This document shows, piece after piece, positions 11,077-11,220 of a stretch of 64,000 nucleotides of DNA; position 1 is the first letter of the stretch; every line of letters begins with the position of its first letter. A program made the translations under genes and the position numbers. The DNA lies in the NCBI RefSeq assembly GCF_006345805.1, contig NC_043001.1, forward strand, positions 110,298,001 to 110,362,000. The letters are read 5' to 3'. Source of the DNA: Octopus sinensis (taxonomy: Eukaryota). The notes below the pieces were generated by a model that had not been told where the DNA came from, did no database searches, and was given only the letters and a program-made list of their open reading frames with translations.

Positions 11077-11220
11077 CCTTTTTTTTCCCGATCCCTTTTG
11101 ATCGGAAATTTTAATTTTTCTTTCTCATTTTTCCCCTTTTCTTTTACATTTTCGAGAAGAAAAGCTCTACGTTTGTATTTGTCCCCTCTGCGTCCAGCCC
11201 TGAGTGGCCAATAAAGAAAC
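11077..11220 (+). mobile_element. L1/Tx1-type LINE 3' UTR fragment flanked by TATC repeats
   Basis: Matches the 3' ends at 30460-30594 and 62990-63096 (GATCCCTTTTGATCG...CAGCCCTG.GTGG..AATAAAGAAAC). Confidence 0.75.

What the first reader, a model, noticed from the sequence alone, without database searches (positions are those of the whole stretch)
11178..11220. S1 SINE tail is homologous to the 3' end of the L1/Tx1 LINE
LINE end 11178-11219 (TTTGTCCCCTCTGCGTCCAGCCCTGAGTGGCCAATAAAGAAA) aligns without gaps to SINE tail 24208-24249 (TTTGTCCCCTCTGTGTTTAGCCCCTTGTGGGTAATAAAGAAA) at 34/42 nt. Shared 3' ends are the established mark of SINE-LINE partnership, mostly described for CR1, L2 and RTE; to my knowledge a Tx1-type partner is uncommon. 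The sequence after the tail is TATCT for the LINE and (G)TATT for the SINE, consistent with a common endonuclease preference.
Basis: partly seen in the sequence, partly recalled or inferred. Interest (0 to 1): 0.75.

Follow-up and report, generated by a model that had tools for sequence, protein, structure and literature searches.

The report
Octopod SINE borrows an L1-type LINE tail
One subfamily of the abundant short repeat (SINE) in this octopus-like genome ends in about 42 bases copied from the end of an L1/Tx1-type LINE, which is the usual sign that the short element borrows the long one's copying machinery; the partner type is uncommon but the principle is ordinary.

Summary
11178-11219 and 24208-24249 match at 34/42 without gaps. 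The consensus tails (4 LINE copies, 12 SINE copies in the window) also match at 34/42, in the same register from the 3' end, far above shuffles and above unrelated AATAAAGAAA-ending sites.

11178-11219 is the end of a 142-bp 5'-truncated LINE copy. A longer copy (29771-30594) joins the same tail to an ORF2 C-terminus with the CCHC/zf-RVT motif. That C-terminus is 74% identical to a full-length ORF2 (endonuclease + RT + zf-RVT) from a metagenome contig. LINE relatives in Argonauta hians and in that contig carry the same terminal box, so the box belongs to the LINE lineage. The ORF2 is closest to human L1 ORF2p. Tx1 membership is plausible but was not tested by phylogeny.

Two corrections:
- The "common endonuclease preference" fails. 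Every LINE copy abuts (TATC)n, and three also have it directly upstream. The SINE copies do not.
- The "(G)TATT" after the SINE tail is an internal junction where a SINE unit restarts.

A monomer at 6010-6241 ends exactly at this tail and has a 14-bp target-site duplication.

Verdict: a genuine common-tail SINE/LINE pair, a new member of a known kind. Trans-mobilisation is inferred, not shown.

The parts
11078..11219 (+). LINE copy c1: a 5'-truncated copy holding only the last ~142 bp of the 3'UTR, including the CGATC-CCTTTT-GATCG hairpin. The start is approximate (+/-10 bp).
   Evidence: Aligns to 30468-30594 of the longer copy (72.8% over 136 nt); sequence.
11178..11219 (+). Terminal 42-nt box of LINE c1 (the finding).
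   Evidence: 39/42 to the LINE consensus, 34/42 to 24208-24249.
11223..11300 (+). (ATCT)19.5 microsatellite abutting LINE c1.
29516..29568 (+). LINE copy c2: extreme 5' truncation, tail only.
   Evidence: 93% to 11172-11300, 89% to 63044-63226, microsatellite included.
29570..29770 (+). (TATC)50 between LINE c2 and LINE c3.
29771..30594 (+). LINE copy c3. It holds an ORF2 C-terminal remnant (29772 to about 30170, frameshift near 30125) with CPRC...H....C (zf-RVT), then a ~420-bp T-rich 3'UTR with two copies of the hairpin, then the terminal box 30552-30593.
   Evidence: Translation; Pfam zf-RVT E = 2.8e-4, below the curated cutoff; tblastn to P0155 residues 973-1103 at 74% identity; sequence.
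30596..30696 (+). (TATC)25 abutting LINE c3.
62337..62432 (+). (TCTA)24 directly upstream of LINE c4, with no LINE tail before it.
62433..63096 (+). LINE copy c4 (5'-truncated inside ORF2), 79% identical to c3.
63109..63220 (+). (TATC)28 following LINE c4.
24020..24600 (+). Composite SINE. It has a full unit with the B-tail (24020-24252), a unit restarting at SINE position 49 with a B-tail (24253-24437), and a third unit ending in the A-tail (24438-24600).
24208..24249 (+). SINE B-tail box (the finding's second sequence). Here it is internal to the composite.
   Evidence: 36/42 to the LINE consensus.
6010..6241 (+). SINE-B monomer ending exactly at the B-tail. It is flanked by the target-site duplication GTATTCTTTGAGTA (5991-6004 and 6242-6255).
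4238..4997 (+). 5'-truncated SINE-B followed by three 184-bp units, each ending in a B-tail. The array ends at a B-tail.
6500..6877 (-). SINE dimer (head+body+B-tail+body+A-tail) with a ~9-bp duplication (GATATCAAG). Here the B-tail is internal and the A-tail terminal.
21643..22297 (-). Two SINE copies with B-tails: 22066-22297 followed by a unit with an A-like end, and 21643-21871, which ends at the B-tail.
35672..35888 (-). SINE-B copy ending at the B-tail. This is the B-tail closest to the LINE consensus (37/42).
49843..50071 (-). SINE-B unit followed by a partial unit.

Best explanation
A subfamily ('B') of the abundant octopod SINE carries a module of about 42 nt at its 3' end. The similarity may reach ~55 nt if a 2-nt gap is allowed; that extension was seen by eye and not scored. 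The module was copied from the extreme 3' end of an L1-superclade LINE family that looks Tx1-like and is associated with microsatellites.

The LINE consists of ORF1 (with a CCHC knuckle), ORF2 (APE endonuclease + RT + zf-RVT/CCHC), a T-rich 3'UTR with a conserved hairpin, a terminal box TTTGTCCCCTCTGTGTGCAGCCCTGTGTGGCCAATAAAGAAA, and then a microsatellite.

The proposed mechanism is the classical 'common tail' one. The LINE's ORF2 protein recognises the terminal box on RNA (stringent-type 3'-end recognition) and starts target-primed reverse transcription there. A SINE transcript ending in the same box is accepted as template in trans.

Shown: the homology of the tails, their position at the very 3' end of both elements, contiguity of the LINE tail with ORF2, conservation of the box across LINE relatives, and a SINE-B monomer that ends at the box and has a target-site duplication.

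Inferred: that the box is what the RT recognises, that this LINE family (or a close subfamily) did the mobilising, and that transfer went from LINE to SINE.
For: - Tail homology: 34/42 both copy-to-copy and consensus-to-consensus, same register, 0/5000 shuffles reach the score. The window-wide scan is bimodal: 32-39/42 for LINE and SINE-B tails against at most 25/42 elsewhere.
- LINE identity: the tail follows an ORF2 C-terminus with zf-RVT in the same copy. That remnant is 74% identical to residues 973-1103 of P0155. P0155 is 1111 aa with Exo_endo_phos + RVT_1 + zf-RVT.
- Relatives: LINE relatives outside the window end in the same box. These are L003 (...TTGTCCTCAATGTCCTAGGCCCTAGTGGCCAATAAATGAA) and Argonauta hians L004/L006 (...TCGTCCCCTCTATGTTTTGCCCTTGTGGCTAATAAAAGAA).
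- Same-genome partner: the SINE-B consensus is closer to the window's own LINE (33/41) than the three LINE families are to each other (28/41).
- Retroposition ending at the box: SINE-B 6010-6241 has a 14-bp duplication.
- Argonauta SINE copies have the same body and end in ...GGCCCTTGTGGCTAATAGAGAAAT, a related box.
- SINE-B copies are 89% identical pairwise, tail and body alike, so the tail is an integral part of the family.
Against: - No shared target or 3' repeat. All 4 LINE copies abut (TATC)n, while no SINE-B terminus does. In pairs such as SINEU/Tx1-Mar the shared target was the main argument for mobilisation (PMC4494074).
- In most loci the B-tail is internal and followed by another SINE unit. 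Dimers end in a different A-tail, so many copies were probably mobilised through another 3' end.
- Only 4 LINE copies, all truncated, are in the window. They are older (79% identical to each other) than the SINE-B copies (89%).
- No convincing conserved RNA structure in the box. RNAalifold predicts none, and the 4-bp hairpin I proposed is broken in the window's own LINE copies.
Confidence: 0.7

Rival explanations
1. The tail was captured from this LINE lineage long ago, but it is now mostly a passenger. The SINE copies seen here would have spread through other 3' ends (the A-tail of the composites) or through a different, non-target-specific LINE subfamily, not through the (TATC)n-associated LINE in the window.
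For: The B-tail is internal in at least 7 loci with an identical junction, so the composites were themselves source elements. Dimer 6500-6877 has its duplication around an A-tail end. The SINE and LINE insertion sites differ. The A-tail shows no significant similarity to the window LINE tail.
Against: Monomer 6010-6241, copy 21643-21871, copy 35672-35888 and the array 4238-4997 all end exactly at the B-tail; the first has a clean duplication. Among the LINE tails available, the window's own LINE is the closest to the B-tail.
Confidence: 0.2
2. The direction is reversed: the LINE lineage acquired its terminal box from the SINE.
For: Homology alone gives no direction. Argonauta also has both a SINE and a LINE with the box.
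Against: The box is present in three LINE families. The window and Argonauta ORF2 C-termini are only 55% identical. Each family has its own 3'UTR and microsatellite. The SINE carries at least three interchangeable 3' modules on one head and body, which is the pattern expected from tail replacement in SINEs (PMC5786205).
Confidence: 0.07
3. The similarity is chance or convergence, because both ends are pyrimidine-rich and carry a polyadenylation-like AATAAAGAAA.
For: Ten of the 34 matches lie in AATAAAGAAA. The window is AT-rich and repeat-rich.
Against: 25/30 identity remains without that motif, with 0/5000 shuffles reaching the score. Other AATAAAGAAA sites match only 5 and 11 of the 32 upstream bases. 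The register is the same in all 16 copies.
Confidence: 0.02

Closest known systems
Stringent-type SINE/LINE pairs with a common 3' tail (for example UnaSINE1/UnaL2 in eel, tortoise Pol III SINE/CR1, Bov-tA/Bov-B; 58 pairs are listed in PMC3747384)
   Same: The SINE's last tens of bases are homologous to the very end of a LINE's 3'UTR, and the SINE inserts with target-site duplications.
   Different: Those partners are mostly CR1, L2 or RTE, and the pair usually shares the same 3' repeat. Here the partner is L1-superclade, and the SINE lacks the LINE's microsatellite.
L1-clade stringent pairs: ZmSINE2/ZmSINE3 with LINE1-1_ZM (maize) and SINEX-3_CR with L1-1_CR (Chlamydomonas) (PMC3472496)
   Same: An L1-clade LINE with a conserved, specific 3' end that is shared with a tRNA-type SINE. 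This argues for specific rather than poly(A)-based template recognition.
   Different: Those are plant or algal and end in poly(A) or poly(T). This pair is an animal (cephalopod) case with a microsatellite-associated LINE.
SINEU mobilised by Tx1-Mar in crocodilians (PMC4494074)
   Same: A Tx1-group LINE proposed as the driver of a SINE.
   Different: That partnership was inferred from a shared insertion target and shared 5' heads. Here the 3' tail is shared and the target is not.
Microsatellite-specific Tx1-clade LINEs Kibi ((TC)n), Koshi ((TTC)n) and crocodilian Tx1 in (TTCC)n/(TTTC)n (described in PMC4494074)
   Same: LINE copies are embedded in one microsatellite type in one orientation, and full-length copies form tandem head-to-tail arrays (Argonauta locus L004).
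   Different: The repeat units differ: (TATC)n in the window and (ATT)n in relatives. Clade membership is not proven here. The microsatellite could also be the LINE's own 3' repeat.
Octopus SINEs OK, OR1 and OR2 (Ohshima and Okada 1994, cited in PMC4824008 and PMC4758252)
   Same: Abundant short interspersed repeats of octopus. The three published families are tRNA-derived; that origin was not confirmed for the SINE in this window.
   Different: I could not compare sequences because that paper and Repbase are not available here. Whether the window's SINE is one of these families is untested.

Membership tests
SINE/LINE common-tail pair | The SINE 3' terminus is homologous to the extreme 3' terminus of a LINE. 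| tested here: met
   34/42 at consensus level, same register, 0/5000 shuffles reach the score.
SINE/LINE common-tail pair | The LINE tail is contiguous with a reverse-transcriptase-encoding ORF2. | tested here: met
   Copy 29771-30594 joins the ORF2 C-terminus, the 3'UTR and the tail. Full-length relatives L003 and L004 have EN+RT+zf-RVT followed by the same box.
SINE/LINE common-tail pair | The short element is a true SINE, with a Pol III-type (tRNA-like) head. | tested here: inconclusive
   ARAGORN finds no tRNA and Rfam gives no match for 5990-6260. Only box-A-like and box-B-like motifs (GAGTTCAAATTCC) are visible by eye.
SINE/LINE common-tail pair | SINE copies that end at the shared tail are flanked by target-site duplications. 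| tested here: met
   6010-6241 is flanked by GTATTCTTTGAGTA on both sides. This is the only clean case in the window.
SINE/LINE common-tail pair | The pair shares 3' repeats and/or an insertion-site preference. | tested here: not met
   4/4 LINE copies are followed by (TATC)n, against 0 of the SINE-B termini.
SINE/LINE common-tail pair | The LINE proteins mobilise the SINE in trans. | not testable with these tools
   This needs a retrotransposition assay.
L1 superclade LINE | ORF2 has an APE-type endonuclease, an RT and a C-terminal Cys-His (zf-RVT) domain. | tested here: met
   P0155 and P0166 carry Exo_endo_phos + RVT_1 + zf-RVT. The window retains only the zf-RVT end (E = 2.8e-4, below the Pfam cutoff), which is 74% identical to P0155.
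L1 superclade LINE | The protein is closer to L1 ORF2p than to other LINE reverse transcriptases. | tested here: met
   P0166 against the PDB: human L1 ORF2p E = 1.9e-53 over residues 7-857; R2 proteins reach E = 3.6e-24 at best, on the RT only. CR1, RTE and other clades have no solved structure to compare with.
Tx1 group within the L1 clade | The RT phylogeny groups the element with Tx1, Keno, Kibi and Koshi. | not testable with these tools
   No named Tx1 reference sequences were available, and the database names are uninformative.
Tx1 group within the L1 clade | Target-specific insertion. | tested here: inconclusive
   4/4 copies are followed by (TATC)n and 3/4 are directly preceded by it, always in the same orientation. 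Empty (TATC)n arrays exist at 27.9, 36.4 and 52.8 kb. Argonauta has tandem LINE arrays joined by (ATT)n. The sample is small, and the repeat could be the LINE's own 3' repeat.
Tx1 group within the L1 clade | ORF1 is of the RRM/zf-CCHC type rather than Transposase_22 (PMC5203782). | tested here: inconclusive
   Argonauta ORF1 (L004:1694-2962) gives a zf-CCHC hit at E = 0.004, below the cutoff, and no Transposase_22. A CX2CX4HX4C knuckle is visible in L003.

The most novel reading that the evidence does not exclude
An L1/Tx1-type LINE family with specific (non-poly(A)) 3'-end recognition is the driver of a large part of the octopod SINE expansion. Its SINE passenger escapes the LINE's microsatellite targeting. 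That would mean target choice in this lineage depends on pairing between the LINE RNA's own 3' repeat and the target, which a Pol III SINE transcript lacks, rather than on the endonuclease alone.
Probability: 0.2. Interest if true: 0.65.

Novelty: new member of a known kind. Interest (0 to 1): 0.42.

Why it matters
SINEs are the largest repeat class in Octopus genomes and have been linked to genome rearrangement and neural transcription (PMC8967140, PMC12988792). The open literature I could search names no autonomous partner for them. A tail shared with an L1/Tx1-type LINE gives a concrete, testable candidate.

It would also add an animal example to the very few L1-clade LINEs thought to recognise a specific 3' end. 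The 2013 survey of 58 pairs lists none with a Tx1 partner and none from molluscs (PMC3747384).

The mismatch between LINE and SINE insertion sites offers a natural test of what sets target specificity. The principle of a common tail is textbook, so the advance is incremental. Curated repeat libraries that I could not consult (Repbase, Dfam) may already hold the pair.

Tried and rejected
- The word-indexed protein search with the window's ORF2 remnant found only two short metagenome fragments (P0001, P0002). Their contigs L001 and L002 hold no LINE tail.
- A second search with P0166 gave no informative names for clade assignment.
- ARAGORN and Rfam did not recognise a tRNA in the SINE head.
- RNAalifold predicted no consensus structure for the tails. 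My hand-drawn 4-bp hairpin (GCCC-CUUGU-GGGU) reaches 86% paired cells, against 15-49% for slid controls, with one CG/GC flip. It is broken in the window's four LINE copies and was derived from the same sequences, so I do not rely on it.
- Single-sequence folds of the 3' regions are not significantly more stable than shuffles in 6 of 8 cases.
- The SINE A-tail is not significantly similar to the window LINE tail (score 12 against 11.4 for shuffles). It is only marginally similar to the Argonauta LINE tail (9/3000) and the Argonauta SINE tail (3/3000). I therefore dropped the idea that both SINE tails come from this LINE.
- Species-specific co-variation of SINE and LINE tails in Argonauta is not supported: 24/41, no better than cross-species pairs.
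- No other ORF of 130 aa or more tested in the window gave a reliable Pfam match. tblastn with full-length ORF2 relatives found only the two C-terminal remnants.
- The Albertin 2015 genome paper is not held. Literature searches found no statement on octopus SINE partners.

Full report
**Observation.** They match at 34 of 42 positions without gaps, and blastn within the window gives E = 1.3e-5. The window is AT-rich and full of one SINE family. Its nearest protein and repeat relatives are in the octopod Argonauta hians, so I treat it as an octopod genome. That is an inference, not a database identification.

**What lies at 11178-11219.** There is no long ORF upstream. The stretch 11089-11220 aligns to 30468-30594, which is the end of a longer repeat present twice: 29910-30598 and 62429-63100, 79% identical to each other.
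- Translating the longer copy gives ...[20 protein letters not shown]..., running up to a stop. Pfam places this on the last 27 positions of zf-RVT (E = 2.8e-4, below the curated cutoff).
- tblastn shows the remnant is 74% identical to residues 973-1103 of P0155. P0155 is a 1111-aa ORF2 with Exo_endo_phos, RVT_1 and zf-RVT on a 5.2-kb metagenome contig.
- So 11178-11219 is the terminal box of a 142-bp, 5'-truncated copy of a LINE.
- The window holds four such copies, all on the + strand: about 11078-11219, 29516-29568, 29771-30594 and 62433-63096.

**What the SINE is.** About 25 copies or fragments share a head and body (GGCGGCGAGCTGGCAGAA ... GAGTTCAAATTCCGCCGAGGTCGAC ... GGGGTCGATRTAATCGAC). 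After ATCGAC there are alternative 3' modules:
- An A-tail (...CAAAATTTCGGGCCTTGTGCCTAGAGTAGAAAAGAATA; 6 copies).
- The LINE-like B-tail (TTAATCCGTTTGTCTGTCCTTGTTTGTCCTCTCTGTGTTTAGCCCCTTGTGGGTAGTAAAGAAATA; 12 copies).
- A third module at 9742-9880.

The head was not recognised as a tRNA by ARAGORN or Rfam, so 'tRNA-derived' rests on box-like motifs only.

The B-tail is a real retroposition terminus. Monomer 6010-6241 ends at ...GTAAAGAAATAT and is flanked by GTATTCTTTGAGTA on both sides. In at least seven loci, however, the B-tail is followed directly by a SINE unit that restarts at position 49 (GTATTTCGTCTG). This gives dimers, trimers and arrays with a 184-185 bp period. The copy cited in the finding is the first unit of such a trimer (24020-24600).

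**Is the similarity more than chance?**
- The consensus of the 4 LINE ends and the consensus of the 12 B-tails match at 34/42, in the same register counted from the end.
- The local alignment score is 44, against 13.2 +/- 2.3 for 5000 shuffles, with a maximum of 27.
- Without AATAAAGAAA the match is still 25/30, and no shuffle reaches its score.
- Sliding the LINE 42-mer over both strands gives a bimodal result. LINE and SINE-B tails score 32-39/42. Everything else scores 25 or less, and two of the four sites at 24-25 are the gapped B-tail at 21643 read out of register.
- Two unrelated AATAAAGAAA sites score 15 and 21.

The second criterion (tail and ORF2 from different families) fails because of the contiguous copy and the relatives below.

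**Evidence from elsewhere.** A HMMER profile of the ORF2 C-terminus (alignment A1) found 318 relatives. Three loci with 3' ends could be fetched.
- L003 (metagenome): ORF2, about 230 bp of 3'UTR, then ...TTGTCCTCAATGTCCTAGGCCCTAGTGGCCAATAAATGAAATC(ATT)n.
- Argonauta L004 and L006...TCGTCCCCTCTATGTTTT(T)GCCCTTGTGGCTAATAAAAGAA, then (ATT)n.

The box is thus a conserved feature of this LINE lineage, even though the window and Argonauta ORF2 C-termini are only 55% identical. The SINE-B consensus is closer to the window's own LINE (33/41) than the three LINE families are to one another (28/41). L006 also holds Argonauta SINE copies with the same body (...CGATAAAACAAGTACCAGT...ATCGAC) and tails ending ...GGCCCTTGTGGCTAATAGAGAAATCTAT. 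The SINE with a related tail therefore exists in a second octopod genus. A closer match between the Argonauta SINE and the Argonauta LINE than across species was not seen.

**LINE clade.** P0166 (Argonauta ORF2) matches human L1 ORF2p at E = 1.9e-53 from the endonuclease through the RT. R2 proteins reach 3.6e-24 at best, on the RT only. The ORF1 region has a CCHC knuckle (weak Pfam hit; visible in L003) and no Transposase_22 hit. This fits what PMC5203782 describes for the Tx1 group. Octopus genomes are reported to hold active L1-Tx1 families (PMC13282606, PMC8967140). I could not make an RT tree with named Tx1 references, so 'L1 superclade' is shown and 'Tx1' is only plausible.

**Flanks.**
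- All four LINE copies are followed by (TATC)n on the sense strand.
- Three are also preceded by it right at the truncation point.
- For 62433-63096 the upstream array has no LINE copy before it.
- (TATC)n arrays without a LINE exist at 27.9, 36.4 and 52.8 kb.
- In Argonauta, full-length copies lie head to tail with a period of about 5993 bp, joined by (ATT)n.

This pattern matches microsatellite-specific Tx1-clade elements such as Kibi and Koshi (PMC4494074). With four copies I cannot exclude that the repeat is the LINE's own 3' repeat.

SINE-B termini are followed by CTTCTATGATT, GTATTCTTTGAG, AGAATAAAATAA and AAGGATTATTT, never by (TATC)n. The Argonauta SINE copies are not in (ATT)n either. 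The claim of a common endonuclease preference is therefore not supported. If anything, the insertion sites differ.

**Structure.** RNAalifold finds no consensus structure in the tails. A 4-bp stem around a CUUGU loop is paired in 86% of cells, against 15-49% for slid controls, and one pair flips between C-G and G-C across families. It is broken in the window's own LINE copies, and I derived it from these same sequences. I leave it as a hypothesis.

Further upstream in the LINE 3'UTR there is a better candidate hairpin:
- window: CGATC-CCTWTT-GATCG
- L003: CCCC-CTATT-GGGG
- Argonauta: TCCTC-CTATT-GAGGA

It was predicted in 5 of 5 LINE folds. The SINE does not carry it.

**Mechanism.** The best reading is the classical one. 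The SINE acquired the LINE's terminal box by tail replacement (a process described in PMC5786205), and transcripts ending in the box are taken by the LINE's ORF2 protein as templates for target-primed reverse transcription. The different insertion sites could mean one of three things:
- A sister LINE subfamily without microsatellite targeting was the driver.
- Targeting depends on pairing between the LINE RNA's terminal (UAUC)n and the target, which a SINE transcript lacks.
- The B-tail is now largely a passenger inside composites that move through the A-tail.

These are inferences, and none was tested.

**Comparison and novelty.** Shared tails are the established mark of SINE/LINE partnership. 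Of the 58 pairs in PMC3747384 most involve CR1, L2 or RTE, three involve L1-clade LINEs (plants and an alga), none is Tx1 and none is from a mollusc. SINEU/Tx1-Mar is a Tx1 case argued from a shared target, not from a shared tail (PMC4494074). I found no open paper naming a partner for octopus SINEs. Repbase, Dfam and the 1994 and 2010 cephalopod SINE papers were out of reach. I therefore class this as a new member of a known kind, of moderate interest.

Noticed in passing
window 4265-4996, 24069-24555; junctions at 4445, 4629, 4813, 6666(-), 22066(-), 24252, 24437, 49843(-): The LINE-like B-tail is followed directly by a SINE unit restarting at SINE position 49 (GTATTTCGTCTG), with the same junction in independent loci. 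This gives dimers, trimers and arrays with a 184-185 bp period. Composite source elements or template switching at a TAGG/TAGCC microhomology could explain it.
   Followed up: partly
window 9557-9880; 16618-16756 (-); 16922-17071 (+): A third 3' module (about 140 bp) is attached to the same SINE head and body at 9557-9722 and is repeated twice near 16.7-17.0 kb. One SINE body therefore carries at least three interchangeable tails.
   Followed up: partly
window 11091-11106, 30375-30390, 30469-30484, 62883-62898, 62991-63006; L003 5022-5037; L004 6525-6541: The LINE 3'UTR has a hairpin with a conserved loop and different stems in different families (CGATC-CCTWTT-GATCG, CCCC-CTATT-GGGG, TCCTC-CTATT-GAGGA). 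It is duplicated in the two longer window copies and predicted in 5/5 folds. It may be a protein-recognition element that the SINE lacks.
   Followed up: partly
L004 (Argonauta hians BAAFZT010000048.1) 1-9288: Full-length LINE copies lie head to tail with a period of about 5993 bp and are joined by (ATT)13 and (ATT)5, as expected if new copies insert into the microsatellite at the end of older ones.
   Followed up: partly
window 10237-10376, 10904-11037, 11468-11607, 42484-42620: Another ~140-bp repeat family (TTCCCCTCTCAG...CTTAAAGCCAGGAACTTTT), each copy followed by a microsatellite. It is probably the 3' end of a different retroposon and lies immediately upstream of LINE copy c1.
   Followed up: no
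window 11800-13040: ORFs of 105-324 aa on both strands here are artefacts of long GGT/GTA/AGT trinucleotide repeats, not genes.
   Followed up: no
L001, L002 (ENA ERZ23872314, ERZ23872221); L003, L005 (JGI 3300045642, 3300045673): Metagenome assemblies contain contigs of this cephalopod-type LINE (up to a near full-length 5.2-kb copy). This is presumably host or prey DNA in the samples.
   Followed up: no
window 21640-22330 (-): The string AAGGATTATTYAAAAGAAAAYT occurs three times between consecutive SINE copies. This indicates either a ~22-bp target-site duplication from an insertion into the end of a neighbouring SINE, or local tandem duplication.
   Followed up: no
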